Of a stretch of DNA of 64,000 nucleotides, positions 27,811 through 55,366 are shown in pieces. How positions within the stretch are numbered: the first letter of the stretch is position 1; each line of letters opens with the position of its first letter. Source of the stretch: Octopus sinensis (Eukaryota); NCBI RefSeq assembly GCF_006345805.1, contig NC_043001.1:127906001-127970000 (forward strand), read 5' to 3'. The translations under genes and the position numbers were made by a program. The notes under the pieces are model-generated. The model did not search any database. It was given only the letters and a program-made list of their open reading frames with translations, and was not told where the DNA came from.

Positions 27811-27863
<53 letters not shown>

Positions 27864-32257: not shown

Positions 32258-32364
32258 AATCATTTGGGATTTAATTAAAGAGAAATTGATCCAGCCTTTT
32301 GTTGAACTCGAGTACCACTTTTATGATCTTTCCATCCAAAACAGAGACAAAACAAATGACCAAG
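32258..32364 (+). CDS. IDH1: IDH1 coding exon 3 ([35 protein letters not shown])
   Basis: tttcag|A ATC ATT TGG...GAC CAA G|gtaata; phase 2-1. Missed by the ORF track. Confidence 0.96.
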
Positions 32365-32659
32365 GTAATATGAACTGATACTTTATGAATTGATGATACA
32401 ATTAATTTCAGTCATTTTGTTATTGTTGTTTGTAGGGGTTGCTGCTTTAAAAAAAATATATATTATATGGTATTTTTGTAAGCCCTGCATAATAATATGT
32501 ATTTAGTTGTGTCAGTGATTCTTTAGTTTGTGCATGTGTTAGGTGCAATGAGTGATAAGAATTAAATTTTTTAATTTAATCACCAGCATCTGCATCAAAG
32601 TTATCATCATTATTATTGTTAAAGGTTGATGTGCGCTTCACTTCCAACCCTAATATGTT

Positions 32660-34313: not shown

Positions 34314-34400
34314 TGACTATTGATGCTGCCCATGCCATTAAAAAGTACAATGTTGGAATCAAATGTGCCACCATAACTCCTGATGAAAAAAGAGTTGAAG
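34314..34400 (+). CDS. IDH1: IDH1 coding exon 4 ([29 protein letters not shown])
   Basis: actcag|TG ACT...GTT GAA G|gtaaga; contains the conserved KCATITPD motif. Confidence 0.97.
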
Positions 34401-36240: not shown

Positions 36241-36401
36241 AATTTAACCTAAAGCAGATGTGGAAATCACCAAATGGAACAATTCGGAATATTCTAGGTG
36301 GCACTGTATTTAGGGAGGCCATCATTTGTAAGAACATTCCAAGGTTAGTGCCAGGATGGACCAAAAGTATCGTCATTGGCCGTCATGCATATGGTGATCA
36401 A
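36241..36401 (+). CDS. IDH1: IDH1 coding exon 5 ([54 protein letters not shown])
   Basis: attcag|AA TTT...GAT CAA|gtaaga; contains SPNGTIRN and the R132-equivalent (GRH). Confidence 0.98.
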
Positions 36402-37726
36402 GTAAGAAAGTTCTCCTTTTGAATTTTAGTACAATGTTGGCATTTATTTATTGTTTTGTTTTGTTGTTGCTTGTTTTGAAGGTGAAAGAAATGACATTAA
36501 CCCTTTTGATACCAACTTGATTCTATGATACAAACTTCCTGTTTTAAAGTAAACTAATGATTTTTTATTACCCATAAAGGGCTTACACAGAGGGGGACAT
36601 TACAAACACTGGGGACACAAAACATCACAAATACATAAACATATGAAATATGAAAATTTTGAAAATTAAAAATGAAAGCAATGTCAACGGCCCCATCCGA
36701 TAACATCACTTACCTGTCCTTCTTCCCTATAACGGTATGAAAATCATGTAGTCCCCTAGTTTCGTTCCATATATTTCTTCCAGCTCATATCTTTTATCTG
36801 GTTCAATTGTTTGCCTAATCAATTTATAACTTTTTTCCAAAAACTTTTCCTCGAGTTCTTTTTCCTGTTCCTCAGAAATTATTACATACATCAACCCTGC
36901 CCTATCCCAGCTGTCTTCCCATTACACTTTTCCCCAGTCTTTCATTATTTCACATATTTCTTCCTTTTTTTATTACACCTAGTATATTGGGACTAGAATT
37001 TTTAAAGTTATCCTGTGTGCTTGCGTTATCTTTTTTTTTTGTTTTCTTGTTGGTGGAGATCAGGTGGCTTCAGTGTGTTTTAAAGTAAACTAAATTAAAG
37101 CCTGCCATCTAGATTTCATGTTAAATTATGTGCCAAACACCATCTTAGTAATGACAAAGTTATTTTACTAAATTCTTCATTATTTCGAAATTAACAGGAA
37201 CAAAGTCAGAACAGTTCTATACAAATATGGTGAGAAAAGGGTTGGTCATAGCTTAACCCTTTAGCATTTAAACCGGCCATATCCGGCCAAAAATATTCTA
37301 CCTGTTTTATGTTCAAACTAGCCCTATCTGGTCTCTCACAGCAACCCTACAATATTGTTTAAAAAATTAACAGCTACCTCATCAAAATCTCATAGCTACA
37401 AGATAATGCATGATTAATTCAAAACAATGTGGATGAAGAAGCATTAATTTTGGCAGAATAATGCGAACACTAAAGAGTTAAAAAACATCATTTGCTTTTA
37501 AGGGATAAAGATTAATAGGTGCTGATAGTTAATTCATGCCAAGTAAAGTTGTTCCCACAGCATTTCTACCATTGGGACAAATTTTCACCAATCTCTTCCA
37601 CCCTGCTCCATCTTGGGCTTTCTTTAAAAAAAAAAGAATTAACTATTGGTGTAAGTCCCCTCCTCCAATGGTAAGATATGATTTGAGGGTAATTTCGCTG
37701 TTATTTTTAGTGAGTTGACTGACGAT

Positions 37727-38065
37727 CAGTGGTTCTCAACAGAGGTCCATAGGGCCCATGAGGGTCCATATAAGATTTTGGGGTTCACACAACAAAATAG
37801 TAAATTGGATATCCACTATATTATTTTAAGGGCCCATGAAAAAATTTTGCTTTAGATGTATGTATTGCAAGATACAATTTGGTTTCTTTCTCTAACATTT
37901 TACATAGTTCAACCTACATGAGTTAATGTGTGAAAAACAATATAGGAATTTTGAAAGAAGTTTCTATGAAGCTATTTTCTAAACATTGAACATCTATGGG
38001 GATCCATCAGAATAAAATAGTAAGCAAATGGGTCCATAGATAAAAAAAATGGTTGAGAACCCCTG
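37727..38065. mobile_element. hAT-type MITE
   Basis: CAGTGGTTCTCAAC...GGTTGAGAACCCCTG termini; the 8-bp TSD has decayed. Confidence 0.75.
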
Positions 38066-38331
38066 ATGTAGAGGCTTCCTTGATGTTTTTGAGGGTAAGG
38101 GATAAGCAGAATTGGGGTAATGCTGGACAAAATACTATGCAGCATTTTGACAGATATTGTTACACTGAGGGTTCAAATCTAACTGAGGTCAACATAACCT
38201 TTTATTTTTTCAGGGGCAAACAATAAAAAAGTCTTAGGCAGTGTGTTAATTACCAATATCCCTCCCTCCAAAAACTGTGATTTTTGTTAAGAATCATTTC
38301 TCAGAATTTATTTTAACTTTATTTATTGCAG

Positions 38332-38475
38332 TATAAGGCAACTGACTTTGTTGTTCCTGGCCGTGGAAAAGTTGAAATAAAGTTTACACCAGAGTCTGGT
38401 GAACCAACACAGTATACAGTGTTTGACTTTAAAGATGGTGGTGGTGTTGCTATGGGGATGTACAATACAGATCAG
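38332..38475 (+). CDS. IDH1: IDH1 coding exon 6 ([10 protein letters not shown]...GMYNTDQ)
   Basis: ttgcag|TAT AAG...GAT CAG|gtgaga; 48 codons, includes the catalytic Tyr. Confidence 0.97.
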
Positions 38476-38870
38476 GTGAGAAGCATTCTATTTTTGTCTA
38501 TGACTGCTGGCAGAGTGTTCATAGCTATTATGCACATAAATACACATGCACTCTCATGCACTAAAACATCTGTGAAGAGACACATACATGTTTATATATG
38601 CACACATGCATGCACATACACATACAAATACGTACATAAATGTGCACACACACACACACACACACACACCACAGCACATACACACATACATGTGCATACT
38701 TAACTGTTCTAATCTAAGGAAACCATTGAATGAATTATCTTCCCCACCCTGCCCCACCACCTACTGTTGCTGCCAACACTGGCGATAGCAACACATACAC
38801 ACATGTATGTGTGTGTGTATATATATATATTCACACACACACACAGATAGATAGATAGATAATATCTGTA

Positions 38871-39290
38871 TTGGGTCATCCCATAAATAATACGGGTTTT
38901 TTTATACTTCTTTTATTTTTCAAAATTAAGATAAACAAAGTTCTTTCTTAATCTGAAATATACTCTCCTTCATTTTCTACAATGCTCTTCCATCTATCTG
39001 GTAGACTTGCAAGGCTCCTCTTCCAAAATTCACTTGTCCATGATGAAAAGTACTCCTCTAGTAATGTTCTGACTTCATCTACAGAATTCATATTTTTTCC
39101 ATTCAAATGATTTTGAATACTGCGAAATAAATGATAATCTGATGGGGCAATGTTTGGCGAATATGGTGGGTGGGACATTGTTTCCCATTCAAACTACTCT
39201 AGCCTTTGGAATGTCATCTTCGCTGTATGTGGCTGAGCATTATCCTGATGGAAGAACATCTTTTTGTCTTGAAACCAAAAAATGGTTGTT
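38871..39290 (-). mobile_element. Mariner 3' fragment in intron 6
   Basis: HPPYSPNIAPSDYHLFRS...DRWKSIVENEGEY; terminus TA|TTGGGTCATCCC. Confidence 0.88.
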
Positions 39291-39359
39291 TATCTCCATC
39301 ATTAGCATCACCACCATCATCATAATCATCATGTTTAAAACTTCTTTTTTTATTTTCAG

Positions 39360-39427
39360 AGTATAACAGATTTTGCTCACAGTTCATTCCAGTTTGCTTT
39401 GTCAAAAAGTTGGCCCCTATACCTGAG
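39360..39427 (+). CDS. IDH1: IDH1 coding exon 7 ([23 protein letters not shown])
   Basis: tttcag|AGT ATA...CTG AG|gtatat; phase 0-2. Confidence 0.96.
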
Positions 39428-40496
39428 GTATATAAGTTTTATCAATCATTATGGCTTCAGACTGTGATGTGTATTTTAGGGTAAAGCTAAAATCTCAACA
39501 AGATTTGTGGCTGAAGCTATTTCATATCTCTGAGATTTCTGTAAATAAACTGTGTTTAAATTGGCTTAAAAATTTCACTCTTCTCTGAAACTGTCAAATT
39601 ATGGGCTGTGAATTTCTTTATTAGTTAATTCAGTGTGCTTGCAATTTGTTTTATGCACATAAATTCGTTTTATGCATACTCTTTGAACGTTGGGCAATGT
39701 CTAGTGAACGAGACCTTTGGCGATATGCCGTGCTTGAACAGACCTCTTAAACCAAATAAAATCATAGTCATGGCCAATGCCAGTGTCACATAACTGGCAC
39801 CCGTACCGGTGGAATGTAAAAGGCACCTTTTAAGCGTTGGACCTCACAGAAGCATCGTGGCTGATGCTAGTTTCATGTAACTAACACCTGTGCTGGTGGC
39901 ACGTAAAAAGCACCTTTTGAGTGTTGGGCCTCATGGAGGCAATGACAAATGACTGAGACCTTTACCAATATACTGTGCTTGAGTAGAAGGCCTATCATGC
40001 CAAGTGAAATCATAGTTGTGATAAGTACTAGTGTTATGCAACTGGGACCTGTGCTTGTGGAACATAAAGGCACCCATTACACTCTCAGAGTGGTTGGCGT
40101 TATGAAAGGCATCTAACCATAGAAACCACGTCAACTTAGACTGGAGTCTGGTGTGAACCCCCCACTCCCCGGCTTACCAGCTCTGGTCAAACCATTCAAC
40201 CTATGTCAGCATGGACAGTGGACATTAAATGATGATGATGATGATAAATATGCATGAGTTTTGTTGGTCCTCTTTGACTGATGACCTTGACACAGTTAAT
40301 GTTTGTTAAAAACGTCTGCTAAAGAAATTTGACTGAGAAGGATATAGTCCTCTATGTTGTTACAGTCCTTAGGAAGAATGAGTATGTTTTTAGTATGACA
40401 CACCGAGGGGAATAGGAAAGGAGTATAACTAGATAGGCCTAGAGGAAGGTGTTACACAATTTTCTATTTCAGAGGAGCAGATATTATTTGGGTAGC

Positions 40497-41025
40497 ATCA
40501 TCATCATCATCATCATCGTTTAATGTCCGTTTTCCGCGCTAGCACGGGTTGGACGGTTCGACCGGGGTCTGGGAAGCCAGGGGCTGCACCAGGCTCCAGT
40601 CTGATCTGGCAGAGTTTCTACAGCTGGATGCCCTTCCTAACGCCAACCACTCCGCGAGTGTAGTGGGTGCTTTTTACGTGCCACCTGCACAGGTGCCAGG
40701 GGGGTTCGGCATCGGCCACAATCGGTTGGAGCTTTTAACGTGCCACCGGCACGGAAGCCAGCTAAGGCGGCGCTGGCAACCGCTCCGTTTGGATGGTGCT
40801 TTTTATGTGCCACCGGCACAGAAGCCAGTCGGGGTGGTGCTGGCATCGGCCACGTTCGGATGGTGCTTTTTATGTGCCACCGGCACAGAAGCCAGTCGAG
40901 GTGGCGCTGGCAACGGCCACGTCCAGATGGTGCTTTTTATGTGCCATTGGCACAGAAGCCAGTCGAGGTGGCACTGGCAACGGCCATGTCCGGATGGTGC
41001 TTTTTATGTGCCATCGGCACAGGTA
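40497..41025 (-). mobile_element. SINE-like family C (GGAAGGGCATCCAGCTGTAGAAAC core, (GAT)n tail, internal ~65-bp tandem repeats), representative copy
   Basis: Copies: 3955-4264(+), 5780-5966(+), 17668-17900(-), 18112-18310(-), 18537-18733(-), 20250-20510(+), 29772-30070(-), 33590-33894(+), 35870-36030(-), 39700-40245(+), 43457-43940(-), 45996-46285(+), 54005-54245(+), 61882-62190(-). Confidence 0.88.
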
Positions 41026-42134
41026 TCACAACTACTATTTCCATTGATATTTATATTTATTTCGATGTTCAAAAAAAAATCAGTGAGAGGAAACATTGAA
41101 TCTGTGAGCCAGTGCTTGTACTGTGTTGTTGAGTGAATATCTTGTTAAACTACTGAATAGCCTTCCGCTTGATGTTCCCTAGAATGTGCAGAGTAGATAA
41201 GTGAACATTACTTCAATGAAAGTATTCTTTTAACTTATAGAAAGCTATCAACTAATGAGAGCTGAAGTATTTCCTAGCTTTCAAGAGCAAGCTTACATTT
41301 TTGGGAACCCAATTTGCAAGATTTTTAATAGATGGCATCAGCACAAAGGATTATTAGAAATTGTAACATCTAGCACTGAGAACATTATTCATATGCAATG
41401 AAAATATGGTAAAAGTCGGTTTTCTTGACATGTGTAGGAATCAGTTTAACCCTTTAGTGTTTAAACCGGCTGTATCCGGCCCAAATATTTTATACATTTT
41501 ATGCTCAAACTGGCCAGAACCAGCATCTCACACCTACCCTGTAATGTCATTCTTAAAATAAGCAATTACATCTTTCTTATCTGGAAGCTACAAAATAATA
41601 TCAGATAAAATTTTTTTAAATGTGAATAAATAAGGATTATTTTTGCCAAATTAATCTGAACGCTAAAGGGTTAATGTTGTTAAAGGGGAATAGTTTCTCT
41701 TGTCATTGTCCCATTTTAGATTTGCTTTTAGCTTTTTTACAATTTTTGTTGTTTCTTCTTTCTTCTTACAAGTGTCTGTCATATAAACTTTTATTTTCTT
41801 TTTATTGGCTTCCTTGTTGACAGAAAGCAGTTTTTATGTTCCTGTTTTGTAGCTATTTGTTTTAATTTTCCTTTGTTTTTTACTAAATAGTCCTACTGTT
41901 GATACCCTATAAAAGTTTTCTATTGCATAAGGCCCTGTGTCTCTGTATTTATAGTAAATATAATACTTGTGTCAGGTTTTGATGAGTGTTTTGTAAATAA
42001 ACCATTATTTTATTAGTTTTTCTGTCTGGTCTTGCAATCTCATTCAGAGTCTACAGCAATAACAAACATTTTTGAGGTCATTATTTTTACTAACTCTTTA
42101 GCATTCAGATTCCTCTGTCAAATGTAATGCTTAT

Positions 42135-42622
42135 GTTAGTTAGTTAGTTAGTTAGTTAATTTGGCTCAAAAGCAAATAGCAAGGCCATGTAGGGGGACAT
42201 GGAGTTAAGTACAGGGTGGTGTTCATGTAAAGAGTTCAGGCCACTTGAGGTCCAGGGAGGCTTTGAACAAAGCGGTCATCGACATCTTCACCATCTTGTC
42301 TGGCAGCTTGTTCCACGGATCCGCAACCCGGACGGAGAAAGCTCCTCTCCTTTGATTGAGATGAAATCGTCGCAGGTAGAGCTTTTCGGAATGACCCTGC
42401 AGCTGACGCTCTGGAGCAGGAGTGAAGAACAGCTCTTTTGAGAGGTTACACTTTCCGCTTATGATGTTGTGGGCGAGAATGAGATCACCACGGCGGCAGC
42501 GTTTTTCAAGAGAATAAAGGTCGAGCGTCCTCAGCCTTTCTTCGTAGGACAAATTTTTGAGACCATGAACCATGTGGGTAGCCAGCTTCTGGACTCTTTC
42601 GAGATGCTGTATGTCTTTGAGG
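42135..42622 (-). mobile_element. 5'-truncated CR1-clade LINE
   Basis: LSYEERLRTLDLYSLEKRCRRGDLI...FSVRVADPWNKLP; (TAAC)n tail. Confidence 0.9.
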
Positions 42623-44307
42623 ACACTTTAATCACACTGATATGAATTAGTCATGCATTACCTTGTAACTTTGGACTTTTCGATGATGTGATTGTTTATT
42701 TTTATAATAATATTGTAGGATAAGTGTGAGAGGCTGGGTCTGGTCAGTTTGAAGATAAAACTAGTAGATTATTTTGACCAGATATGGCCAGTTTAAATGT
42801 TCAAGGGTTAATCTTGCAGACTCTTTGACAATCTTCTCCATTTTGTTTTCTGTAGTAATTGATTGACTGCTCCCTTCCCTTCAAAATTGCTGGTCTTGTT
42901 CTTGAATCAGAAACCCTTATTAATATTTCAGTTGTCTTAGTTAAACTTTGTGAATATGCAACTGAACACAGCCTTGTTTGCCTTAACCACCTGCAGTTTT
43001 TTTCTTTTTCTTTTTTTTTTTCTAGTCTGTTAAAAATACTATATGTTATATGGGTGCACTGCCTAGTAGTGCTCTTTTCTGAATGTTGTGAATGTGTGTA
43101 AGTTCTGATGTTTTGGATAGGTATTTTATGTCATTTGTATATATGTTTTTTCTTTGGCATATCGCCAATACCTGAGTTTTTGCATTTTATTTATAACACT
43201 CTCTTGGTAATAGAGTGTATCTGTATTTCTTTATTAGTTTATTTTAGGGAACATTTCTGAGCTGTAAAATATTTCTAGATAACCTCAGATTATTAATAGC
43301 ATTTCTTTACAAGTAACTTAAATGATCTTCCTTGTTTTATAGCTGCAATTAGATTTTGCATGTTGTAATATGTTGGAATATTCAGCAAAATATAGACATG
43401 TTATTACCACAATTATTGTCTGCGAAGGGTTACTTATTGTAGTTGATGCAATATATCATCATCATTGTTTAACATCCGCTTTCCATGCTAGCATGGGTTA
43501 GACGATTTGACTGAGGGCTGGCGAACCAGATGGCTGCACCGGGCTTCAATCTTGATCTGGCAGTGTTTCTACAGCTGGATGCCCTTCCTAACGCCAACCA
43601 CTCCGAGAGTGTAGTGGGTGCTTTTTACATGCAACCAGCACGGGGCTAGTCAGGCAGTACTGGCAATGACCTCACTCGAAACTTTTACACATGCCACCAG
43701 CACATGTGCCAGTAAGGCGATGCTGGTAACAATCACACTCGAATGGTGCCTTTTATGTGCCTCTGGCATGGAGGCCAGATAGCCGCTCTGGCAACGATCA
43801 TGCTCGGATGGTACTCTTAACACCCTACTAGTACGGGGCTCGAGTGTCAGTAAGGCGACACTGGTAATGATCATACTCGAATGGTACCTTTTATGTGCCA
43901 AGCCGGTTAGCTGCTCTGTCAACAATCACACTCGTATGGTGAAGCAGTGCATATTGACATTTATCATTCCTAAAAACATTCAATACCTGTTGCACCTGAT
44001 TTCATTAAAAATTAGTAAAAGCTAAAATTGCTGAAATTTTTATTATTCCATAGCTGTTTGTCTATTCCTACATTAAATCTGAATTTTTTTTATAACCTAA
44101 AACTATTTTGTAGAAAAGCTGACTATGTTTTCATGTATATAATTTATTATTTATGAATTTTATATAATAATTTTATACACATATCTACACTTTGTTTAAA
44201 AGAAAATTCTTTGTGAATACAAGCTAAGCTGAAGTTTAAAATTCAATTTAATTTACTTCCCCCTTTTTTTTTTGTTGCTTTAAATATCATCAATAATTTA
44301 ATTTCAG

Positions 44308-44376
44308 TACAAAAAATACCATTTTAAAGAAGTATGATGGCAGATTTAAAGATATTTTCCAGGAAATATATGAAAA
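44308..44376 (+). CDS. IDH1: IDH1 coding exon 8 (S-TKNTILKKYDGRFKDIFQEIYE-K)
   Basis: tttcag|T ACA AAA AAT...GAA AA|gtgagt; includes the catalytic K212-equivalent. Confidence 0.97.
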
Positions 44377-45312
44377 GTGAGTATTTTATCTTGTACAATA
44401 CTTTAATTTTTTTCATTCATTTTGGACTATTTATTCTATATTTTGTGAATGTAAATTTTCTGTTTTTGTTATTGGATTCTTCATTTATATTTACATGTTG
44501 CTGAGATGGCATATCTCCTGGTTCAGTTATTTTGTAATTGAATTGATTCACAACTGAATTCTGATGGTGAAATTTTTAAGCATGATGACTTACTCTTTTT
44601 TACTTGTTTCAGTCATTTGACTGCGGCCATGCTGGAGCACCGCCTTTAGTTGAGCAAATCGACCCAGGACTTATTCGTTGTAAGCCCAGTACTTATTCTA
44701 TCGGTGTCTTTTGCCGAACTGCTAAGTAACGGGGATGTAAACACACCAGCATTGGTTGTCAAGCAATGCTAGGGGGACAAACACAGACACACAAGCACAC
44801 ACATACATATATATATATATATATACATATATACGACAGGCTTCTTTCAGTTTCCGTCTACCAAATCCACTCACAAGGCATTGGTTGGCCCGAGGTTATA
44901 GCAGAAGACAGTTGCCCAAGATGCCACGCAGTGGACTGAACCCGGAACCATGTGGCTGGTTAGCAAGCTACTTACCACACAGCCACTCCTGCACTTGCTT
45001 AACATCTAATGAACTGTTACACACATGTCATCGCATATAGCTCATAATTAGAAGCAGGACTGGGATTCAGTGTGACTAGCAATTCAGTTGGTTAAACAAC
45101 TGGAAACTAATTATCAGAAATTCTAACTCAGATACACATATTTGACTGCTGAGTTTTATTGGCTGCTATCTCGTAACTAGCAGAGAGATCAGCATTTTAT
45201 ATCCTGTCACCAGTATTCTATTGTTTTGTGACCAAAATATTTCACTTTCACCCCCACCACCCCTGTTGCATATAACTATTATAGAATAAGAGCTGAATAA
45301 CATTCAAAATGT

Positions 45313-45560
45313 GGAGGCACGTGGCTTAGTGGTTAGGGTGTTGAACTCATGATCGTAAAGTTGTGGTTTCGATTCCTGGACTGGGCAATGCATTGTATTC
45401 TTGAGCAAAACACTTCATTTCACGTTGCTCCGGTCCACTCAGCTGGCAAAAATGAGTAATCCTGTGATGGACCGGCATCCCGTCCACGTGGGGAATTTCT
45501 ACACCACTGAAACCAGGAAACTGGCCCTTATGAGTCTGGCATGGCTTGAGAAGGAAGATT
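45313..45560 (+). mobile_element. SINE family D (tRNA head GGCTTAGTGGTTAGGG...TTCGATTCC; CORE/V-like middle)
   Basis: A/B boxes visible; minus-strand relatives at about 21325-21530, 19400-19516 and 47200-47420. Confidence 0.75.
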
Positions 45561-46671
45561 TATTATTTTTTTTTTAGCATTCAAAACAATAACCAGACTG
45601 AAGAATTGATTGTGTATTTCATAAGCTTATTGTATGAAGTTCAAAAACACCCACAGAAGGAAAAAAGTTACTTGTGATTGATTAGCCTCTTATCCAAGGT
45701 TGGCTTGCTTACATATGCATGTGAAGACTAATTCTAGCAGACTGTGTGGAAGAAACCTTCACAGTTGAATGTAGTAGAAGGCAACTGCAGCAACAAATTG
45801 TAGAGTACAGCGTGCAAGATGAGACAAGTAAGCTGTGTTATCCACTGCACTCGTCTCTATTCCCAGTCATCTTGACCTTGTCACTGGATTGAAGATGGTT
45901 GCAGACAAGAGAGTGAGCTTGACAGTGCACAACTCTTCACTGAAAACAAAGTCACCATGTAAGTTATCAGTCATCCTTAACCCTTTAGAGTTCACAAAAA
46001 ACACCATCCGAGTGTGGCCGTCTGGCACCTGTGTCGGTGGCACATAAAAAACACCATCCGAGTGTGGCTGTTCGCCAGCCTCGTCTGGCACCTGTGTCGG
46101 TGGCACATAAAATCACCCACTACACTCTCGGAGTGGTTGGCGTTAGGAAGGGCATCCAGCTGTAGAAACACTGCCAGATCTGACTGGCCTGGTGCAGCCT
46201 TTGGGCTCCCCAGACCCCAGTTGAACCGTCCAACCCATGCTAGCATGGAAAGCAGACGTTAAATGATGATGATGATGATGATGATTATTCTGCCAAAATT
46301 AATGCTTTTTTATCCACATTGTTTTGAGCTAGTTATGCATTATCTTGTAACTATGAAAATTTGATGAGGTAGCTGTTAATTTTTAAAACGATATTGTAGG
46401 GCTGGTGTGAGAGACCAGATCTGGCCGGTTTGAACATAAAACAGGCAGAATACTTTTGGCCGGATATGGCCGGTTTGAATGCTAAAGGGTTAAAGATGAC
46501 TAGATAGTCCCCATCACTCTAATGAACAAACATATATATAGATCCGAGGCTAGGAGGAATATACCTCTTTGTCACTTAATACTAATAATACTAGTAATAA
46601 ATCATAGGTAGGTTTATTTGTTATGTAGTCAAGTTTATCTATAATTCTGAATTATTTTTTGCACTCTTTAG

Positions 46672-46823
46672 AGACTATAAAAGTAAATTTGAAGCCAAAC
46701 AAATGTGGTATGAACATCGTTTAATTGATGATATGGTAGCCTTTGTGTTGAAATCTGAAGGTGGCTTTGTATGGGCTTGTAAAAATTATGATGGTGATGT
46801 ACAGTCTGATACTGTGGCACAAG
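46672..46823 (+). CDS. IDH1: IDH1 coding exon 9 ([51 protein letters not shown])
   Basis: ctttag|A GAC...CAA G|gtatgt; includes the metal-binding Asp residues. Confidence 0.98.
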
Positions 46824-46950
46824 GTATGTTGGTGTTTTTTGTTCTTTTTGATTTTGGTTTGTGATAAATTTTCTCTTTGCTTTTAAAACATTCTTCAGAT
46901 TAAGAAACATTGGTTCTTTTACATTTTTGCTTTCTTTGTATTTTTTGCAG

Positions 46951-47091
46951 GTTTCGGTTCTCTTGGTTTAATGACAAGCGTTTTGATGTGTCCGGATAAC
47001 AAAACAGTCGAGGCTGAAGCTGCTCACGGTACTGTTACTAGACACTATCGGTTCCATCAGCAGGGCAAAGAAACATCTACTAATTCCATAG
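46951..47091 (+). CDS. IDH1: IDH1 coding exon 10 ([48 protein letters not shown])
   Basis: ttgcag|GT TTC...ATA G|gtaaac, after a 127-bp intron; contains the [14 protein letters not shown] motif. Confidence 0.98.
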
Positions 47092-47847
47092 GTAAACAGT
47101 CCTCTTGTTCTATTGGACCCCATATCAAAAGTACATTTTAAAGCCAGCCATCACTCATGCACAAGTATGGCTTGCTAACATGTATCATGCCTATTGCTTT
47201 AGGTGACTTTATAGATGCACTCCCAAGCCCCTCGTTCTTGACACAAGGAAATACCCAGAGTGTAACAACTGCAGGGAAAGACAGCTACACCAGTATCTTG
47301 ATTAGTGCTCATTTACAACCAAGCAATGTGAAAAGAAGTGTCTTGTTCAAGCACACAACATACCAGCAAACCTAGGAAATGAACCCTCAACCTTACATTC
47401 ATGGGTTGAACATTCTAACCATTAAGCCTCATGCCTACACCGCCCATATCACATATTTTCTTACTCCTTTACTCTTTTGCTAGTTCCAACCATTTTCTCT
47501 TCTTAGAACTCTAACTTTAAAATTAAGTGGCATTTTTGAGCTAAGGGGAGTTTGTATATGGCCATTCAGCCTGCTTAAAATACTAGTCAAATCTCCCTCA
47601 AATCACTCTTTACTGTTCAGACTATATAAAATCAAGATCCAGGGAGTGATGGATGCTGTATGAGTTTATACTATTTTGAAAAGAAGTAAAAAGTGCACAT
47701 TAAAAACAACCTTTAAAAAAGGAGAGAAAACCCAATGGAGTTTTTCCTCCTTTTCAAGCCTGTATAAAATCAGCAAGTCTATAATATAACATTGCTCTAT
47801 GCATCTTGATCCTGTGTTATTGCAACAATGTGCCCTAACATGATCAA

Positions 47848-47887
<40 letters not shown>

Positions 47888-48676
47888 CCAATTATTGGTT
47901 ACTAAAGACAAATCTGTTTAGACAGGCTTGTGTTCACATCATCACATCTGTCAATTGTTTTGCTCAGATTCCAAAAATTCCTACTTGTTTACAAGGTATA
48001 CTATTCATCAGATTTTTGCTGAAATGGCAAAATGCTACCTGTTATTACCAAAAAGTTGCAAGTACGAATCATGGTATAGATCTGCAACATACCTGTAATG
48101 TTTCATCCATTTGAATTGTGTGTTCATATAATCTCTACCATCTTTCTTGTGCATACTGACACTTATGTTATATTGTATTAATGTTTAATAATGCAGAGAA
48201 AGAAAAGCAGGGGCAGGTACAAGAGAAGAAATCATTGGTTGAAATGATTAACACCTTTCTCTCTCTACCTCTACCTATCTCTCTCCTCTTCTAGCTCGTT
48301 TGCTCCCCCTCTCTCTATCTCTCTTTCCCCTGTCTTCTGTCAGTTTTGCCATATGAGGCATAACAGAAGTTAAAAGACAGGCAGAAGAGCTAAATCATGT
48401 TATTTGCAATGTGTCTCAAACAAATCTGAAGATCCAATCTTTGATGATGTGACAATGCCAAATGATATCACAAGTAAAACTGAAAAAATATAATTGAAAG
48501 TCAATTGCAGCTATGGTGGCAGGGAAGGTGATAATGGTGATGAAATAACCCATATATGAAGAATTTACTTCAAAAGTTACAGAAACATTTTGCTGCAATT
48601 ATGAATGTTTGTTTTCCTTTTTGTTTTTGTATATTCAAAACACAATTTTTGATTTCATTTTCATTTTTCTTCACAG

Positions 48677-48839
48677 CTTCTATATTTGCTTGGACAAGAG
48701 GTCTTGCTCATCGGGCCAAACTGGACAACAATGATAAATTGGCAAAGTTTTCAGCATGTCTTGAAAAAGCTTGTATTGATACAGTAGAGTCTGGTTTTAT
48801 GACGAAAGATTTAGCAATATGTATCAAAGGAATGAAAGG
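48677..48839 (+). CDS. IDH1: IDH1 coding exon 11 ([19 protein letters not shown]...[14 protein letters not shown])
   Basis: tcacag|CT TCT...AAA GG|gtaaat; overlaps ORF-track 48556..48843. Confidence 0.98.
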
Positions 48840-49646
48840 GTAAATTTGCTTTAACTATCACCTATTTAAATGTATTAAATGTATAGCCTTTTCAGGTATC
48901 TTGCTTTAGAAATCATCATCACCCTTATCAAAAATCGCATTTTGCCAGCCATCCTGGTTCTCTGCCATGTCTTTTTGAGGTTAAAGGTCCTCAGATCAAC
49001 CTTCACTACTTCATTTTATCATCCTGGTTCTTCCTCTTCTGTAAGTTCCATCCACATTAACCCTTTCATTACTGTACTCAATTTGAGATGCTCTGTGTTT
49101 CTTTAAATTATTTTAAATATAACAAAGAATTTAGTAAAATAACTTAGTTATCATTAATCTAGTGTTAGGAACGTAAATTGTGACTAAGGTTTGGTGGGAG
49201 ATTTTAATTCAAAACTTATGAAAACAAGACATTTTACCACAGAGCCAGAGCTGGTTTTGGCCGGGTTAGTAACAAAAGGGTTAAGTAATTGCCACTTCTT
49301 TAAACAGCTGTCCTCATTCATAAGTATCATACATCCATACCTGCACAGTCTTCTTTCTTACACACTACATTTGATCTCTCTTACACCCAGTTTTCTTTCA
49401 ATGCATTTATATGTATATGTTATTGTTCATGCATACTTACATTGCATATCCAAGAGCATGCTAGTTTAATTATGTGTGTGTGTGTGTCACTACTTGACAA
49501 TTGATCTTTGCTTACATTTTATGACTGAGAAATTCAGCAAAAACGATTCTGATAGAGTGCCAAACTTAAAATTAGAGTTACTAGTATTGATTTGATTGAA
49601 CATAAACATGCATATAATATATATGTGTATATGTATGTGTGTGTGT

Positions 49647-50224
49647 GGTTTCTGACTACAAATATCTTGGGTCATACATATCATCATCTGGAAAAGATTT
49701 TCTAACTAGAAAGGGTATGGCCTGGTCAGCCTGTAATGACATGCATAAGATCTGGTCATCAAATCTAAGTAGAGATTTCAAACTTGAAATCTTCAAAGCC
49801 ACAGTCAAACCAATTCTACTATATGGCTCAGAAACCTGGACATTATCAAAGAAGCTTGAGAGGCGGTTGGATGGAACCTACACTCGCCTTCTTATGAGAG
49901 CTCAAAATCTCTCGTGGAAGTGTCATCCAACCAAAATGCAAATATATGGGAAACTATCACCTGTGTCATCTCTTGTGAAAGGTACGAGAGTCCAGTTTGC
50001 TGGACATTGTTGTAGAGCTGAAAACGAGGCAATTTCTACTCTTCTCCTCTGGAAGCCATCTACTCGCAATACCAGAGGGCGCACACTCTCTTACCCTGAT
50101 GTAATCTCCAGAGATACAGGCATCCAGCAACAGGACCTCTGTAATGCTATGATGGACCGTGAAGTCTGGCGTAGCATGGTAAATTCCATTGTCTCGACCA
50201 CGGTCAAACAATGATGATGATGAT
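49647..50224 (+). mobile_element. 5'-truncated RTE-clade LINE (second copy 61262-61600)
   Basis: YKYLGS, ILLYGSETWTL, VQFAGH; (TGA)n tail; 191-aa open remnant. Confidence 0.88.
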
Positions 50225-51170
50225 GTGTGTGTATGTATGTGTGTCACTTTTACTCGTTTCACTCATTGGATTGTGGTCATGCTGGGGCACTGTTTTGATG
50301 TGTTTAGTTGAATAAATCAACCTCAGTACATATTTTTTAAATTTGGTTTTTATTCTGTTGAGCTCTTTTGCCAAACTACTAAATTAAGCGGACAGAAACA
50401 AACCAACACCAGTTACCAAGTAGTTGGAGGGGGTCATGTGCAAACACAAAGACACACACACACATGTATATGACAAGCTTCCAAATTCATTCACAAAGTG
50501 TTGGTTAGCCTGGTGCTATAGAAAAAGAGACAATCATCCAAAGTGCTGTGCAATGGGATGAAACCCAAAGCTACATGGTTACAAAACAAGCTTCTTAACC
50601 ACACAGCCATACCTACACCTATATATTCTTTTACTTGTTTCAGTCATTTGACTGCGGCCATGCTGGAGCACCGCCTTTAGTCGAGCAAATTGACCCCGGG
50701 ACTTATTCTTTGTAAGCCCAGTACTTATTCTATCGGTCTCTTTTGCCGAACCGCTAAGTAACGGGGACGTAAACACACCAGCATCGGTTGTCAAGCAATG
50801 CTAGGGGGACGAACACAGACACACAAACATACACACACATACATATTTATATTTATACATATATACTACAGGCTTCTTTCAGTTTCCATCTACCAAATCC
50901 ACTCACAAGGCATTGGTCGGCCCAGGGCTATAGCAGAAGACACTTGCCCAAGATGCCACGCAGTGGGACTGAACCCAGAACCATGTGGTTGGTAGGCAAG
51001 CTACTTACCACACAGCCACTCCTGTGCCTGTATATTGTATATTGCATATATTGTATATATTGTATATATTATGTATATTGCACAAATATACTTAAGAAAC
51101 ATGCATACATACCTGAGTGGTAAATATCTAATCAATTTCCTTTCAGGGTAATGCAACTACAGCTCGGCAG

Positions 51171-51787
<617 letters not shown>

Positions 51788-53559
51788 GAAGAGATAAATT
51801 CTTTTGACCTATTGTTATAGTACTTGGAAAAAAAAAAAAATTTGATATTTATCTCCCAGGTAAACAATAAATGAATAAAATGAAAAGAATAAGATTTTTT
51901 AAATAAATAAATAAATGTATGAGACATTCATATATGATTTTATCGTGTCGAGTTTATGTTGATATGAAACTGTTTGTTTATAATTATTTGATTTCTTCCT
52001 GCATGCGTAGCTATATGACTGCGTGTGTACAGTTGGCGATTTTTTTCCTCTGTCTTCCCTTCTCTGGATCTTTCCTTCTCCTATGTTTCCAACGAAGAGC
52101 TCCGCTCGAAACGTTAAACCCTCCTTCTTTCCTGAGTGTCCAATAATACTATATTTGTTCCACGTCCTCGCGTTGTTGCGTTTTTTTGCGCTTTCTTGTT
52201 TGGATTAACTTTATATGGTTAAGAAGCTTGCTTCCCAGCCATGTGGTCCTTGGTTCAGCCCCACTGAGCAGTATATTTGATGAATGTCTTCTTTCTCGCA
52301 TATTACATTTGATTCCTCTTATGTGCCGTTTTCTCTCAATGCATTTATACTTTATTGTTCAGGCATATTTACATTGCATATCCAAGAGCATGCTAGCTTA
52401 ATTTCTTTCCAGTCTCCTCTAATCCCTTGTATTCTAGGCCTCTGTGTGTGTGTGTGTGCGTGCGTGAGTGTGTGTGTGTGTGTGTTTGTGTCTCACCACT
52501 TGACAAATGGTCTTAGTTTGTTTACATCCTCATGACTGAACAATTCAGCAAAAAACATTATGATAGAATGGATTTGGTTGAAGGAAACTGAAATAAATCT
52601 GTTGTATATAATTCATATATCACATGATCACGTGACCGACCAGACCATCAGATGTTGTTACACATTGCTGGTCACAATGTGTTCGCATTGTTTAGCCACC
52701 CCGCTGGCTAAGCGAGCAGGCCAACAGAAGAAAGAGTGGTGAAAGAGTACAGCAGGGATCACCACCCCCTGCCGGAGCCTCGTGGAGCTTTTAGGTGTTT
52801 TCGCTCAATAAACACACACAACGCCCGGTCTGGGAATCGAAACCGCGATCCTGCGACCGCGAGTCCGCTGCCCTAACCACTAGGCCATTGCACCTCCACA
52901 TATAATTCATATATATACATAGATACATACATATGTCCACCTTGTACATGTCTATGTGTGTGCGAGTTTATGCTTACCCTTGTCTAGATATCATGTGATG
53001 GTTGTAAATAAGCATCAATTCATACAAGTCTTCCAATGAAAAATATGTTTAACTGTGGGAAAATATTTCCTTGCTTGGAAACAGGTGAGGGTGAGTAAAA
53101 GAAAGTGCATACAACCATAGAAAATCTGCCTGAACAAATTCTATCGAATCCATTGAAGTATGGAAAATTGGACATTAAATGATGATGATATTTGCACTAA
53201 GACTCTCTACCCATGTAGTTTATTAACTGGTCAAGCTAATAAAAAAATTGGCTGATTTTAGTAAAGTAACTTGGATTATAAATTGTTATATCAAGCTGAT
53301 ATCTGGAACACAACTCAAAAAAATTGTCCTGTATAAAACTATGATGGAATTATTAGTTGAAATCCCATGTTATCATTCATATAACAATGAAATTTGTATA
53401 AGATTTTCATTTAAATATGGGCATTTTTATGTAAATTCTGCTGGGAAAACTTGATGGTTTTTAAATGATTGACAGAAATAGTGTGGTAACATGTTCAGTG
53501 ACCTTGAGCAATATACATGATGGCATTTTAGTTGCTATGAAACAATGTAATACTTTACA

Positions 53560-54960
53560 TGGTGCTTTTGTGATTGAGACATTTTCTTAAAAAAATAACT
53601 GTGACCTGATTACCCAAATGCAGCAAAATTTTTCTTTGCTTTTTACTGCATTGATGTGTTCAGTTACAATATGATTTTGTTATAGGTAGATAACTTCAGA
53701 TTGACTAGTTCAGCATTGGTAAAGAAACTATCATGACATATATGAATGGTCTAAATAGATGAAAATTTTCAGTCTATTAGTTAGGCTATAGTGAACTGTT
53801 CTTACCATTCTGCATTGAAGCATGATGCAACACTAGTCATTTCAGATTATATCATGCAAAGTATACTGCATGTTGATTTAAATTTTCATCCTTATAAGAA
53901 ATAATTCTATACGATTGATAAAGGTAGAAGATTTTTGTTGAAAACATGCTTGTGATGTGCATGGTTCTTCTTATGAGTGATGAAGTACATTTTCATCTGT
54001 ATGCACGTAAAAAGCACCATCCGATCATGGCCGTTTGCCAGCCTCATCTGGCATCTGTGCCGGTGGCACATAAAAAGCACCCACTACACTCATGGAGTGG
54101 TTGGCGTTAGGAAGGGCATCAAGCTGTAGAAAAACTGCCAGATGAGACTGGGCCTGGTGCAGCCTTCTGGCTTCCCAGACCCCAGTTAAACCGTCCAATC
54201 CATGCTAGCATGGAAAGCGGACGTTAAACGATGATGATGATGATGCTTGCATAAATAAGCAAAACTTCCAAACTTCTGCTGGACATCATTTCACAACAAA
54301 TTAATCTGTACTCTGTTGTGTCTGGGGAGAGTCATTTTCAACACACGAACTCATATAAAGAATCTTGCAAACCAAATCCAAAGACGAAATATTAATCTGT
54401 ACTCTTTTCACTGAAAATATTTATCAGTGTAGTAATGTGTGGCAAACTTTGGCATGATAGACTTATTCTTCTTTGAAGAGGTCAGATATGCAATATCTGA
54501 TTACATTCTGATTGTTACATGTTCATGCTGCTCAACTTCCTTACCTCAGGATTGAACAAATGTGACATTAATATATAACATAAGATGGAGCACCCACCTA
54601 TACAACGAAGGCTTCCATGGAATTATTAAGAAAGTGTTTACCAACTATGTCATTTCTGAACTTGGTGACATATTATGACTTTTTAATTGCCTGATATTTC
54701 TTTCAGTTTTTGGCCAATGTTATTTTCAAGATGATATAAATAGTTAATTATGTGTTGCTAATAGGTTTATAAATGGTACACATTGCTTTGAATGTTTATA
54801 CGATAAGGTGGTTGCTAATGTCTTCTATTTGTAATATTCATTAAAACCATCAAATTTTTCTGCTGGACATTGTATGAGCTGTTACATATGGATTAGTAAC
54901 AGGGATCAGATGTAGTCTCAGGCAAGTTGACATTCGGAAGATTAAATATAATGAAAAGAA
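53560..54960 (+). mobile_element. Highly degenerate Tc1/mariner-superfamily transposase remnant interrupted by SINE C
   Basis: Scattered motifs FHPYK, SDEVHFHL, NKQN, LFFFEE and QDGAP in the expected order. Confidence 0.55.
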
Positions 54961-55015
54961 ATTGTGATATTGTATACAGTTATTAAATAAATCAAATATT
55001 CTTATTTAATTTCAG

Positions 55016-55100
55016 AGTAACAAGAGCTGACTATTTGAATACATTTGAATTTATTGATAAAATTGCTGAAAATCTGAAAACTCTGATGACTTCCATATGA
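55016..55100 (+). CDS. IDH1: IDH1 coding exon 12 ([28 protein letters not shown])
   Basis: tttcag|A GTA ACA...TCC ATA TGA; matches human [21 protein letters not shown]. Confidence 0.96.
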
Positions 55101-55139
55101 CTCGGCAGATTTAAGCCAATAACTGAGAGTAAATTATGA
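55101..55139 (+). CDS. IDH1: Putative in-frame readthrough extension LGRFKPITESKL* (cryptic PTS1)
   Basis: After TGA: CTC GGC AGA TTT AAG CCA ATA ACT GAG AGT AAA TTA TGA. The sequence is directly seen; its translation is inferred. Confidence 0.7.
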   Translation, partial: LGRFKPITESKL

Positions 55140-55360
55140 CTTTTAAGCACTATAGCTTATAAGCATGCAAAGGTCTTTTTTTTTAATCCTCCCTTTTTAA
55201 CTTTCTAGCATTTTCTATTCATTCTGTACGGTTTTAATGAAAATAAGGGCTCATCAAACCAATCAATGCTAGCCTATATTAAAAAAATTTTTTATCTGAA
55301 ATTCTTATAAAAAATCCTGCAGGTAATCTATAAATACTAACGTTTTGTGAATATTTTTGA

Positions 55361-55366
55361 AATAAA
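55361..55366 (+). promoter_or_regulatory. Candidate polyadenylation signal of IDH1
   Basis: AATAAA 260 nt after the stop, followed by T/GT-rich sequence. Confidence 0.55.

What the first reader, a model, noticed from the sequence alone, without database searches (positions are those of the whole stretch)
55095..55140. Hidden peroxisomal IDH1 isoform: stop-codon readthrough exposes a perfect SKL PTS1
Seen: the ORF ends ...LMTSI-TGA with no PTS1. The next in-frame codons read CTC GGC AGA TTT AAG CCA ATA ACT GAG AGT AAA TTA TGA = LGRFKPITESKL*, so the extension ends in SKL exactly at the next stop, and the first stop is TGA followed by CT. Known: vertebrate IDH1 ends in a constitutive PTS1 (-AKL). 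UGA-CU is the readthrough context that generates peroxisomal MDH1 and LDHB isoforms in mammals and peroxisomal enzyme isoforms in fungi. I recall a similar proposal for Drosophila Idh, which should be checked. SKL just before a stop has about a 3-in-10,000 chance under equal codon use (72/64^3). Inference: this animal keeps dual cytosol/peroxisome NADPH supply by recoding. Two other routes give the same frame. Cephalopod A-to-I editing could change UGA to UGI (Trp), although the 5' G neighbour is unfavourable. A cryptic acceptor cag|55109 would give ...KG-FKPITESKL but would delete the terminal helix.
Basis: partly seen in the sequence, partly recalled or inferred. Interest (0 to 1): 0.88.

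Follow-up and report, generated by a model that had tools for sequence, protein, structure and literature searches.

The report
Hidden peroxisome tag after octopus IDH1 stop
The octopus gene for the cytosolic enzyme IDH1 ends in a leaky-type stop codon followed by 12 in-frame codons that spell a perfect peroxisome address tag; annelids, brachiopods and most molluscs sampled share this layout, which was already predicted for fly and sea-hare IDH in 2014, so it looks real and ancient but is a new example of a known trick.

Summary
The window is the Octopus sinensis IDH1 locus, and my 12-exon model reproduces the annotated protein exactly. The CDS ends ...LMTSI-TGA (55098-55100). It continues in frame as CTC GGC AGA TTT AAG CCA ATA ACT GAG AGT AAA TTA TGA, which reads LGRFKPITESKL*.

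In sequence of local composition, SKL directly before the first in-frame stop occurs at 4.6e-4, and any consensus PTS1 at 2.9e-3.

I recovered IDH1 3' ends from 13 lophotrochozoans:
- All 13 stop at TGA.
- 11 have CT at +4/+5.
- 10 carry a 6-19 codon frame-0 extension ending in a PTS1-like tripeptide directly before the next stop. These are Octopus x2, one decapodiform, oyster, scallop, limpet, Aplysia, chiton, Lingula and Owenia.
- None of the 26 other-frame reads does.
- The interior of the extension is not conserved.

Argonauta, Sepia pharaonis and a second decapodiform have lost the signal.

I found no SECIS element, no significant downstream RNA structure, and no support for the editing or splicing routes.

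Stiebler et al. 2014 (Fig. S3B) already predicted this for Drosophila, Apis, Tribolium and Aplysia IDH. I found no experimental test for any animal IDH.

The parts
14704..55100 (+). IDH1 gene (cytosolic NADP-isocitrate dehydrogenase), 12 coding exons: 14704-14719, 16049-16088, 32258-32364, 34314-34400, 36241-36401, 38332-38475, 39360-39427, 44308-44376, 46672-46823, 46951-47091, 48677-48839, 55016-55100
   Evidence: All introns are GT-AG, and the spliced CDS of 1233 nt translates to a 410-aa protein identical to P0001, 'isocitrate dehydrogenase [NADP] cytoplasmic [Octopus sinensis]'. The N-terminus MTKIKGGPVVEMQ has no mitochondrial presequence.
55016..55097 (+). Last coding exon, encoding (G)[27 protein letters not shown]. 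The annotated C-terminus has no PTS1.
   Evidence: It aligns to human IDH1 residues 386-406.
55098..55100 (+). Annotated stop codon TGA, the proposed leaky stop
   Evidence: TGA is the stop in all 13 lophotrochozoan orthologues examined.
55101..55103 (+). CTC codon supplying the CU at +4/+5 (UGA-CU readthrough core), followed by G at 55104
   Evidence: CT follows TGA in 11 of 13 species. UGA-CU was shown to be sufficient for readthrough in U. maydis and HeLa cells by Stiebler 2014.
55101..55136 (+). 12-codon in-frame readthrough extension LGRFKPITESKL
   Evidence: The peptide is identical in O. bimaculoides, with two synonymous nucleotide changes (AAG>AAA, ATA>ATT).
55128..55136 (+). AGT AAA TTA = Ser-Lys-Leu, the canonical PTS1 tripeptide
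   Evidence: The same terminal AGY-AAR/CGA/CAA-YTR arrangement occurs in 9 of the 10 species that keep a PTS1; Owenia has GCA AAG TTA.
55137..55139 (+). Second in-frame stop TGA, directly after SKL
55106..55108 (+).
   Evidence: It would give ...KGMKG-FKPITESKL and delete 27 conserved residues. The preceding 23 nt are 57% pyrimidine with 5 G, against 65% and 0 G for the real acceptor. No such protein was found in the database.
55361..55366 (+). AATAAA, the likely polyadenylation signal, implying a 3'UTR of roughly 280 nt
   Evidence: motif positions. Similarity to O. bimaculoides is high up to about 55340 and drops after that. This is an inference, not verified with transcripts.

Best explanation
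Octopus IDH1 is a dual-destination enzyme made by programmed stop-codon readthrough.

Most ribosomes terminate at UGA (55098-55100) and produce the 410-aa cytosolic enzyme. The UGA-CU context is a weak terminator, so a small fraction of ribosomes decode UGA with a near-cognate tRNA (Trp, Arg or Cys in other systems). They add X-LGRFKPITESKL and stop at the next UGA. The new C-terminus, -SKL, is a canonical PTS1. It would be bound by the import receptor Pex5 and carry IDH1 into peroxisomes, probably as a folded dimer, so one extended subunit might suffice. [quoted passage not shown]

Shown here:
- the sequence architecture;
- its conservation across Lophotrochozoa, with TGA, CU, an open frame and a terminal PTS1 kept while the interior is free to vary.

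Inferred:
- that readthrough actually occurs in octopus, and at what rate;
- which amino acid is inserted at UGA;
- Pex5-dependent import;
- the metabolic role.

The arrangement looks ancestral for lophotrochozoans. With the published insect cases it may be ancestral for protostomes. It has been lost in some cephalopod lineages.
For: (1) The architecture is exactly as described.
(2) Chance is low: P(SKL before the first in-frame stop) = 4.6e-4 and P(consensus PTS1) = 2.9e-3.
(3) Comparative table (from loci fetched). TGA is the stop in 13 of 13 species. CT follows in 11 of 13. A frame-0 PTS1 sits directly before stop 2 in 10 of 13:
- O. sinensis and O. bimaculoides: LGRFKPITESKL
- decapodiform P0244: QNEAELSRSKL
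- Magallana gigas: LAGRDPSKL
- Pecten maximus: LDMEDEPASRL
- Patella vulgata: LSQSSSKL
- Aplysia californica: ...RDASKL
- Liolophura: LRKRSSQL
- Lingula: ...GLSKL
- Owenia: LSNAKL
The other two frames give 0 of 26. The binomial P for at least 8 of 11 at p = 0.0034 is 3e-18.
(4) Extension length (6-19 codons) and interior sequence vary while both ends are fixed. This is the signature of selection on stop context plus PTS1.
(5) The annotated C-termini of protostome IDH1 lack a PTS1, whereas vertebrate and hemichordate IDH1 end directly in -[ASP]KL. The extension therefore supplies what other lineages encode constitutively.
(6) UGA-CU was shown experimentally to drive readthrough in a fungus and in human cells, and it produces peroxisomal MDH1 and LDHB.
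(7) The two O. sinensis / O. bimaculoides differences in the extension are both synonymous (p about 0.045).
(8) mRNA contigs from oyster, Sepia and two other decapodiforms are colinear with the stop and the extension, so the extension lies in the mature transcript.
Against: There are no octopus data on ribosome footprints, peptides, reporters or localisation.

The octopus context is CUC-G, not the stronger CUA(G). Stiebler reports that an A at the third position after the stop further stimulates readthrough, so the rate may be low.

No downstream stimulatory RNA structure is predicted (z = -0.52).

Glu at position -4 of the PTS1 is not ideal (my knowledge of PTS1 preferences, not tested here).

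The signal is dispensable in some relatives:
- Argonauta has +4 C>G, a 2-nt indel, AGT>AGA and TTA>TGA.
- Sepia pharaonis ends -SLP.
- The P0006 decapodiform has an early TGA.

The divergence between the two Octopus species in the extension (2/42) equals the neutral intron rate (5.2%), so within the genus there is no rate-based evidence of constraint.
Confidence: 0.72

Rival explanations
1. Relic or coincidence in Octopus. The extension is inherited from an ancestor in which it worked, or arose by chance, but in today's octopus it is neutral 3'UTR that has not yet decayed. IDH1 is purely cytosolic, as seems to be the case in Argonauta and Sepia.
For: Three of six cephalopod sequences have lost the PTS1, so the feature is dispensable in this class. 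The extension diverges between O. sinensis and O. bimaculoides at the neutral rate. The context is CUC rather than CUA.
Against: All four elements (TGA, CU, open frame, SKL directly at stop 2) are intact. Argonauta shows how fast the region decays once unconstrained: four disabling changes in about 40 nt. Retaining all four elements in Octopus since the split from decapodiforms, one of which also keeps SKL, would be very unlikely without selection. Both substitutions between the Octopus species are synonymous.
Confidence: 0.13
2. A-to-I editing recodes the stop. ADAR edits the A of UGA (55100) to inosine, giving UGG (Trp), so the extended isoform comes from edited mRNA and not from ribosomal readthrough.
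For: Coleoids recode extensively, and stop-loss editing (UAG>UGG, STOP>W) is handled as a real class in cephalopod editome pipelines. The product would have the same frame and the same PTS1.
Against: The target A has a 5' G neighbour, which by established ADAR preference is the least favoured. No significant local RNA duplex is predicted. The same architecture is conserved in bivalves, gastropods, a chiton, a brachiopod and an annelid, and it is tied to the CU that matters for ribosomal readthrough, not for ADAR. I found no IDH entry in the held supplements of the cephalopod editing paper, though those files are small.
Confidence: 0.05
3. Alternative 3' splice site. Exon 11 (ending at 48839) is joined to 55109 (cag|A), or to the AG of the Ser codon, giving ...KGMKG-FKPITESKL or ...KG-GKL. 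This would resemble the splicing-derived PTS1 isoforms of fungal GAPDH.
For: An in-phase AG exists at 55107-55108, and the product ends in SKL. Nine of the ten PTS1-bearing species encode the PTS1 Ser as AGY, which also places an in-phase AG there. Alternative splicing to a PTS1 is known in fungi (Freitag 2012, cited).
Against: It would delete 27 highly conserved C-terminal residues ([10 protein letters not shown].AENL), probably destroying the fold. The candidate acceptor has a poor, G-containing pyrimidine tract. Owenia (GCA AAG TTA) has no in-phase AG at all, and neither does Drosophila. Splicing does not explain the conserved TGA-CT. No such protein isoform was retrieved with a query containing the extension. 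AGY conservation is explained more simply: Ser AGY cannot reach TCN by single substitutions without losing Ser.
Confidence: 0.04
4. UGA encodes selenocysteine, with a SECIS element in the 3'UTR directing Sec insertion.
For: The stop is invariably TGA (13 of 13).
Against: No SECIS family match, even at E<=10, in 54900-57000, and no Rfam hit at gathering threshold anywhere in the window. The likely 3'UTR is short, about 280 nt. The conserved CU fits readthrough.
Confidence: 0.01

Closest known systems
Predicted readthrough-PTS1 of animal NADP-IDH (Drosophila melanogaster Idh, Apis, Tribolium, Aplysia californica): Stiebler et al. 2014, PLoS Genet, Fig. S3 and Table S2 (PMC4207609)
   Same: It is the orthologous gene with the same logic: TGA followed by CT, a short in-frame extension and a terminal PTS1 (SHL, SKY, ARL, SKL). 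My Aplysia locus reproduces their N16-SKL entry.
   Different: Octopus has CTC-G instead of CTA. The extension sequence is unrelated apart from the first Leu and the PTS1. The published cases are in-silico predictions in a supplement, and I found no experimental test for any animal IDH. Cephalopods, bivalves, a limpet, a chiton, a brachiopod and an annelid were not in that table.
Human MDH1x and LDHBx (readthrough-derived peroxisomal isoforms): Stiebler 2014; Schueren 2014
   Same: UGA-CU(A) context, a short extension ending in a PTS1 (CRL, SRL), and dual cytosol/peroxisome targeting of a redox-shuttle dehydrogenase.
   Different: These are different enzymes (NAD-dependent), and they are experimentally demonstrated. 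Their context is UGA CUA(G), which is stronger than the octopus UGA CUC G.
Pre-duplication yeast IDP2 with a cryptic PTS1 in the 3'UTR: Yanagida et al. 2015 (PMC4526572)
   Same: The same enzyme family and the same outcome: a cytosolic NADP-IDH reaches peroxisomes through a cryptic PTS1 hidden behind the stop codon.
   Different: The yeast signal is reached by +1 translational frameshifting. In octopus the PTS1 is in frame 0 and needs only stop-codon suppression.
Constitutive PTS1 of vertebrate and hemichordate IDH1 (-AKL, -PKL, -SKL), plant peroxisomal ICDH and yeast Idp3
   Same: The same enzyme and the same targeting signal class.
   Different: There the PTS1 is part of the main ORF, so every molecule carries it. 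In octopus only the readthrough fraction would.
Fungal cryptic PTS1 by readthrough or alternative splicing (U. maydis PGK, Tpi1, GAPDH): Freitag et al. 2012
   Same: The general principle of hidden PTS1s on core metabolic enzymes, and UGA-CU as the trigger.
   Different: Different genes and a different kingdom. The splicing variant of the mechanism is disfavoured here.

Membership tests
Readthrough-exposed cryptic PTS1 (UGA-CU class) | UGA stop codon followed by CU at +4/+5 | tested here: met
   TGA 55098-55100 followed by CTC. The stimulatory A at +6 is absent; G at +7 is present.
Readthrough-exposed cryptic PTS1 (UGA-CU class) | Stop-free in-frame extension whose last three residues match the PTS1 consensus, directly followed by a stop | tested here: met
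   LGRFKPITESKL then TGA. P(SKL by chance) = 4.6e-4.
Readthrough-exposed cryptic PTS1 (UGA-CU class) | Phylogenetic conservation of both stop context and readthrough-dependent PTS1 (the criterion used by Stiebler 2014) | tested here: met
   TGA in 13 of 13, CT in 11 of 13 and PTS1 in 10 of 13 lophotrochozoans, with 0 of 26 in the other frames. Patchy within cephalopods: kept in 3 of 6 sequences.
Readthrough-exposed cryptic PTS1 (UGA-CU class) | Measured readthrough (reporter, Ribo-seq or peptide evidence) | not testable with these tools
   No expression, footprint or proteomic data are available here.
Readthrough-exposed cryptic PTS1 (UGA-CU class) | Pex5/PTS1-dependent peroxisomal localisation of the extended isoform | not testable with these tools
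   Needs imaging or fractionation. No PTS1 predictor is available offline. SKL is the prototype signal.
Cytosolic NADP-isocitrate dehydrogenase (IDH1 orthologue) | Full-length Iso_dh domain protein orthologous to IDH1, without a mitochondrial presequence | tested here: met
   The 410-aa product is identical to O. sinensis 'isocitrate dehydrogenase [NADP] cytoplasmic', with PF00180 precomputed. Its N-terminus MTKIKGG aligns with the human IDH1 start.
Selenoprotein gene (UGA = Sec) | SECIS element in the 3'UTR | tested here: not met
   No SECIS hit at E<=10 in 54900-57000, and no Rfam hit at gathering score in the window.
ADAR stop-loss recoding site | Edited A in a favourable sequence and dsRNA context, with A>G in RNA-seq | tested here: inconclusive
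   The 5' neighbour is G (unfavourable, from established ADAR preference). The local fold is not better than shuffles (z = -0.52). RNA-seq is not available, so editing itself is untested.
Alternative-splicing-derived PTS1 isoform | Usable in-phase alternative acceptor, conserved among species that share the PTS1 | tested here: not met
   An in-phase cag is present at 55106-55108 but with a weak tract. There is no in-phase AG in Owenia or Drosophila. No isoform protein was found. Junction reads are untestable here.

The most novel reading that the evidence does not exclude
The hidden PTS1 behind UGA-CU in IDH1 may be a single, continuously maintained recoding site that dates back at least to the lophotrochozoan ancestor, and with the insect cases possibly to the protostome ancestor more than 500 million years ago. 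That would make it one of the oldest conserved cellular readthrough events known in animals. It would have been lost repeatedly and recently within cephalopods (Argonauta, the Sepia lineage), which raises the question of what replaces peroxisomal NADPH supply there. The invariant AGY serine codon of the PTS1 in nine lineages fits continuous descent better than repeated independent gain.
Probability: 0.55. Interest if true: 0.6.

Novelty: new member of a known kind. Interest (0 to 1): 0.45.

Why it matters
If confirmed, octopus and most other lophotrochozoans supply peroxisomes with NADPH from the same gene that serves the cytosol. A leaky stop codon would set the split between the two compartments. 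The site would be a clean, deeply conserved natural readthrough signal outside insects and mammals, suitable for testing how UGA-CUN variants tune readthrough. The cephalopod losses give natural knock-outs for asking how essential peroxisomal IDH is. Current genome annotations miss the isoform in every species I examined: the annotated proteins stop at the first TGA. The concept itself has been published since 2014, so the gain is wider scope and stronger comparative support, not a new principle.

Tried and rejected
(1) The search for related loci on metagenome contigs with a protostome IDH1 alignment. It returned only intron-less IDH genes at 65-72% identity, which look bacterial.

(2) A second protein search with the C-terminal 103 aa plus W plus the extension. 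I was looking for annotated extended or alternatively spliced isoforms and for more octopods. It returned only short fragments; none reached into the extension and no new cephalopods appeared.

(3) Looking up the SRA run numbers of the unnamed decapodiform contigs in the literature gave no hits. P0006 and P0244 are called 'decapodiform' only because they share a 90% cluster with Sepia (Acanthosepion) pharaonis IDH1.

(4) The selenocysteine idea: no SECIS.

(5) A downstream stimulatory RNA structure: not significant.

(6) Rate-based constraint between O. sinensis and O. bimaculoides: uninformative, because the species are only about 5% diverged.

(7) Search for IDH in the held supplements of a cephalopod editing paper: nothing.

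(8) Literature search for readthrough + PTS1 + mollusc: no paper in the searchable main texts. The Aplysia entry sits in a supplementary figure.

(9) The cryptic acceptor and the editing route were considered and ranked low, as explained under the rival explanations.

Full report
**1. Observation**

The last coding exon of a plus-strand gene ends ...CTG ATG ACT TCC ATA TGA, with the stop at 55098-55100. The frame continues as CTC GGC AGA TTT AAG CCA ATA ACT GAG AGT AAA TTA TGA (55101-55139), which reads LGRFKPITESKL*. The first stop is therefore UGA followed by CU, and the extension ends in the prototype PTS1, Ser-Lys-Leu, directly at the next in-frame stop.

**2. Gene identity**

I set the splice sites and found a short first coding exon at 14704-14719. 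This gives a 12-exon, all GT-AG model of 1233 nt. Its 410-aa product is identical to the database protein 'isocitrate dehydrogenase [NADP] cytoplasmic [Octopus sinensis]'. It is one residue from the O. vulgaris protein and six from the O. bimaculoides protein. The N-terminus MTKIKGGPVVEMQ has no mitochondrial presequence. The window is therefore the O. sinensis IDH1 locus, and the annotated protein ends ...LMTSI without a PTS1.

**3. Chance**

I generated 400,000 random sequences with the local base composition. SKL directly preceded the first in-frame stop at 4.6e-4, and [SAC][KRH][LM] at 2.9e-3. Requiring TGA (about 1/3) and CT at +4/+5 (about 0.06 from the base frequencies) as well brings the joint chance for one gene to about 1e-5 to 6e-5 (my arithmetic). 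A scan of many windows can still turn up such coincidences, so the comparative test decides the matter.

**4. Cephalopods**

- O. bimaculoides has the same TGA CTC and the same peptide (L001). Two nucleotide differences fall in the extension, AAG>AAA and ATA>ATT, and both are synonymous.
- These two species are only about 5% diverged at intronic sites, and the extension (2/42) is no slower. The only within-genus signal is that both changes are synonymous. With 23 of 108 possible single changes being synonymous, p is about 0.045.
- Argonauta hians (L002) still has recognisably homologous nucleotides, but the element is broken four times: +4 C>G, a 2-nt deletion, AGT>AGA and TTA>TGA. Its frame-0 read is VRL*.
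- The 90% cluster of P0006 contains Sepia (Acanthosepion) pharaonis IDH1, so its members are decapodiforms.
- Sepia pharaonis reads TGA CTT ... LNESQGYCNWSLP*, with no PTS1.
- The P0006 species reads TGA CTT AAT GAA TCT TGA.
- A third decapodiform (P0244, three independent mRNA contigs) reads TGA CAG AAT GAA GCA GAA TTG TCA CGC AGC AAA TTA TAA, which is QNEAELSRSKL*.
- The hidden SKL is therefore present on both sides of the octopodiform/decapodiform split and has been lost in some lineages.

**5. Other Lophotrochozoa**

Every non-cephalopod sampled has the architecture:

| Species | Post-stop sequence | Frame-0 read |
|---|---|---|
| Magallana gigas (genome and mRNA contig) | TGA CTA GCC GGG CGG GAC CCT AGC AAG CTG TAA | LAGRDPSKL* |
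| Pecten maximus | TGA CTA ... | LDMEDEPASRL* |
| Patella vulgata | TGA CTT ... | LSQSSSKL* |
| Aplysia californica | TGA CTA ... | LPGAPCSGQDAAVRDASKL* |
| Liolophura sinensis (chiton) | TGA CTG ... | LRKRSSQL* |
| Lingula anatina (brachiopod) | TGA CTG ... | LAAGEAQGLSKL* |
| Owenia fusiformis (annelid) | TGA CTA ... | LSNAKL* |

Across all 13 sequences:
- TGA is the stop in 13.
- CT follows in 11.
- A PTS1-like tripeptide sits directly before the second stop in frame 0 in 10. This count includes the non-canonical SQL of the chiton.
- The same test on frames +1 and +2 gives 0 of 26.
- Extension length ranges from 6 to 19 codons, and the interior is not alignable between classes.
- With p = 0.0034 per lineage, at least 8 of 11 has a binomial probability of 3e-18, and 13 of 13 TGA has 6e-7 under equal stop use. 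Lineages are not fully independent, but 3'UTRs are saturated at these distances.

A neutral 3'UTR cannot produce this pattern. It is what selection on a leaky stop plus a C-terminal targeting signal would produce.

The annotated C-termini of protostome IDH1 proteins generally lack a PTS1 (-SS, -TS, -QS, -SA and so on). Hemichordate and vertebrate IDH1 end directly in -SKL, -AKL or -PKL.

**6. Mechanism and rivals**

The conserved element beyond the PTS1 is UGA-CU. Stiebler et al. showed by mutagenesis that UGA followed by CU is sufficient for efficient readthrough in Ustilago maydis and HeLa cells. They also found that an A at the next position, and probably a following G, increase it further, and that this context produces peroxisomal MDH1 and LDHB. 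Octopus has UGA CUC G: the core without the stimulatory A. I expect modest readthrough.

- **Downstream RNA structure:** none is predicted (MFE z = -0.52).
- **Selenocysteine:** there is no SECIS element or other Rfam match, so selenocysteine is effectively excluded.
- **A-to-I editing of UGA to UGG:** stop-loss editing is a recognised class in cephalopods. Here the target A follows a G, which ADARs disfavour (established knowledge). No duplex is apparent. The architecture is shared by animals that, to my knowledge, lack extensive recoding, and it is linked to CU, which matters to the ribosome and not to ADAR.
- **The cryptic acceptor cag|55109:** it is in phase and would give ...KGMKG-FKPITESKL. 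It would also remove 27 strongly conserved residues. Its tract is weak and G-containing. It has no counterpart in Owenia or Drosophila, and it does not explain TGA-CT.
- **The AGY serine codon:** nine of the ten PTS1-bearing lineages encode the PTS1 serine as AGY, never TCN. I read this as a sign of continuous descent under selection, because AGY and TCN are not connected by single serine-preserving steps. I do not read it as a splice site.

**7. What is known**

Stiebler et al. 2014 state that D. melanogaster NADP-IDH has UGA-CU and a predicted PTS1 in the extension. Their Fig. S3B lists:
- Drosophila: TGACTA, N10-SHL
- Apis: N9-SKY
- Tribolium: N3-ARL
- the mollusc Aplysia californica: TGACTA, N16-SKL, PTS1 score +9.7

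My independent Aplysia read matches that entry.

These are in-silico predictions. I found no experimental test of IDH readthrough in any animal. Idh is not mentioned in the main text of Dunn 2013, of Jungreis 2016, or of a 2026 Drosophila readthrough preprint. No searchable paper combines readthrough, PTS1 and molluscs.

A related experimental precedent exists in yeasts. Pre-duplication IDP2 reaches peroxisomes through a cryptic 3'UTR PTS1, but by +1 frameshifting.

**8. Verdict**

Readthrough and import themselves remain inferred. The octopus case is a new member of a known, predicted kind. What this analysis adds:
- the breadth of the pattern (annelid, brachiopod, chiton, bivalves, limpet, cephalopods);
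- its apparent antiquity;
- its patchy loss within cephalopods.

I put the probability that octopus makes a functional readthrough-derived peroxisomal IDH1 at about 0.72. Interest is moderate at 0.45. A specialist would not be surprised by the principle, but would value the conservation table and the natural losses.

Noticed in passing
L012:45746-45790 and L003:1324-1368 (decapodiform IDH1 3'UTRs): In Sepia pharaonis and the P0006 decapodiform, the first ~45 nt after the stop are almost identical. The only difference is ctCAAgg versus ctTGAgg. Yet the last seven codons of the CDS differ and include an indel (KEKLDCQ versus KKLYFK). This post-stop stretch carries no PTS1, and I have no explanation for why it is so conserved.
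   Followed up: partly
table; window 55128-55130: The serine of the hidden PTS1 is encoded by AGT or AGC, never TCN, in all nine lineages that have Ser there. Owenia has Ala. This fits continuous inheritance of the signal. It also means an in-phase AG always sits two codons before the stop.
   Followed up: partly
proteins P0083, P0087, P0112, P0118, P0129, P0184, P0197, P0216: Animal IDH1 C-termini vary by clade. Hemichordates end directly in -SKL. Several nematodes end in -SKI, -SKL, -SQL or -AHL. Two passerine birds end in -PKA, not -PKL. Echinoderm-like sequences end in -QLQ. I did not check whether the lineages without a direct PTS1 hide one behind the stop.
   Followed up: no
window 11934-12176: An interstitial telomere-like repeat, (TTAGGG)n with variants, about 240 bp long and about 2.5 kb upstream of the IDH1 start codon.
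   Followed up: no
window 14724-15199: A long (ATCT)n / (TGTA)n microsatellite begins 5 nt after the donor site of coding exon 1 (14719). It creates the spurious 158-aa ORF at 14659-15135.
   Followed up: no
window 3952-4086, 40666-41022, 62038-62184: The same 63-67-nt tandem-repeat unit (GGTGCTTTTTA[TC]GTGCCACCGGCAC...) occurs at three places, once inside an IDH1 intron. It is probably part of a dispersed octopus repeat family.
   Followed up: no
window 10166-10888 (+), 58426-58704 (-), 61202-61588 (+): Retroelement relics flank the gene. The ORF at 10166-10888 hits Pfam zf-RVT (E = 4e-8). The two downstream ORFs look to me like reverse-transcriptase tail fragments, but I did not test them against a library.
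   Followed up: partly
protein P0003 (O. vulgaris): An annotated 406-aa O. vulgaris isoform starts MGGPVVEMQ, not MTKIKGGPVVEMQ. This implies an alternative first exon or start. The equivalent in the window was not located.
   Followed up: no
window 16089-32257: The intron between coding exons 2 and 3 is about 16 kb. The 1.2-kb CDS is spread over about 40 kb.
   Followed up: no
window 55024-55131 and 55535-55632: Three sub-threshold C/D-box snoRNA-like Rfam matches (about 20 bits against gathering scores of 42-55, E about 1) overlap the last exon and the 3' flank. I treat them as chance.
   Followed up: yes
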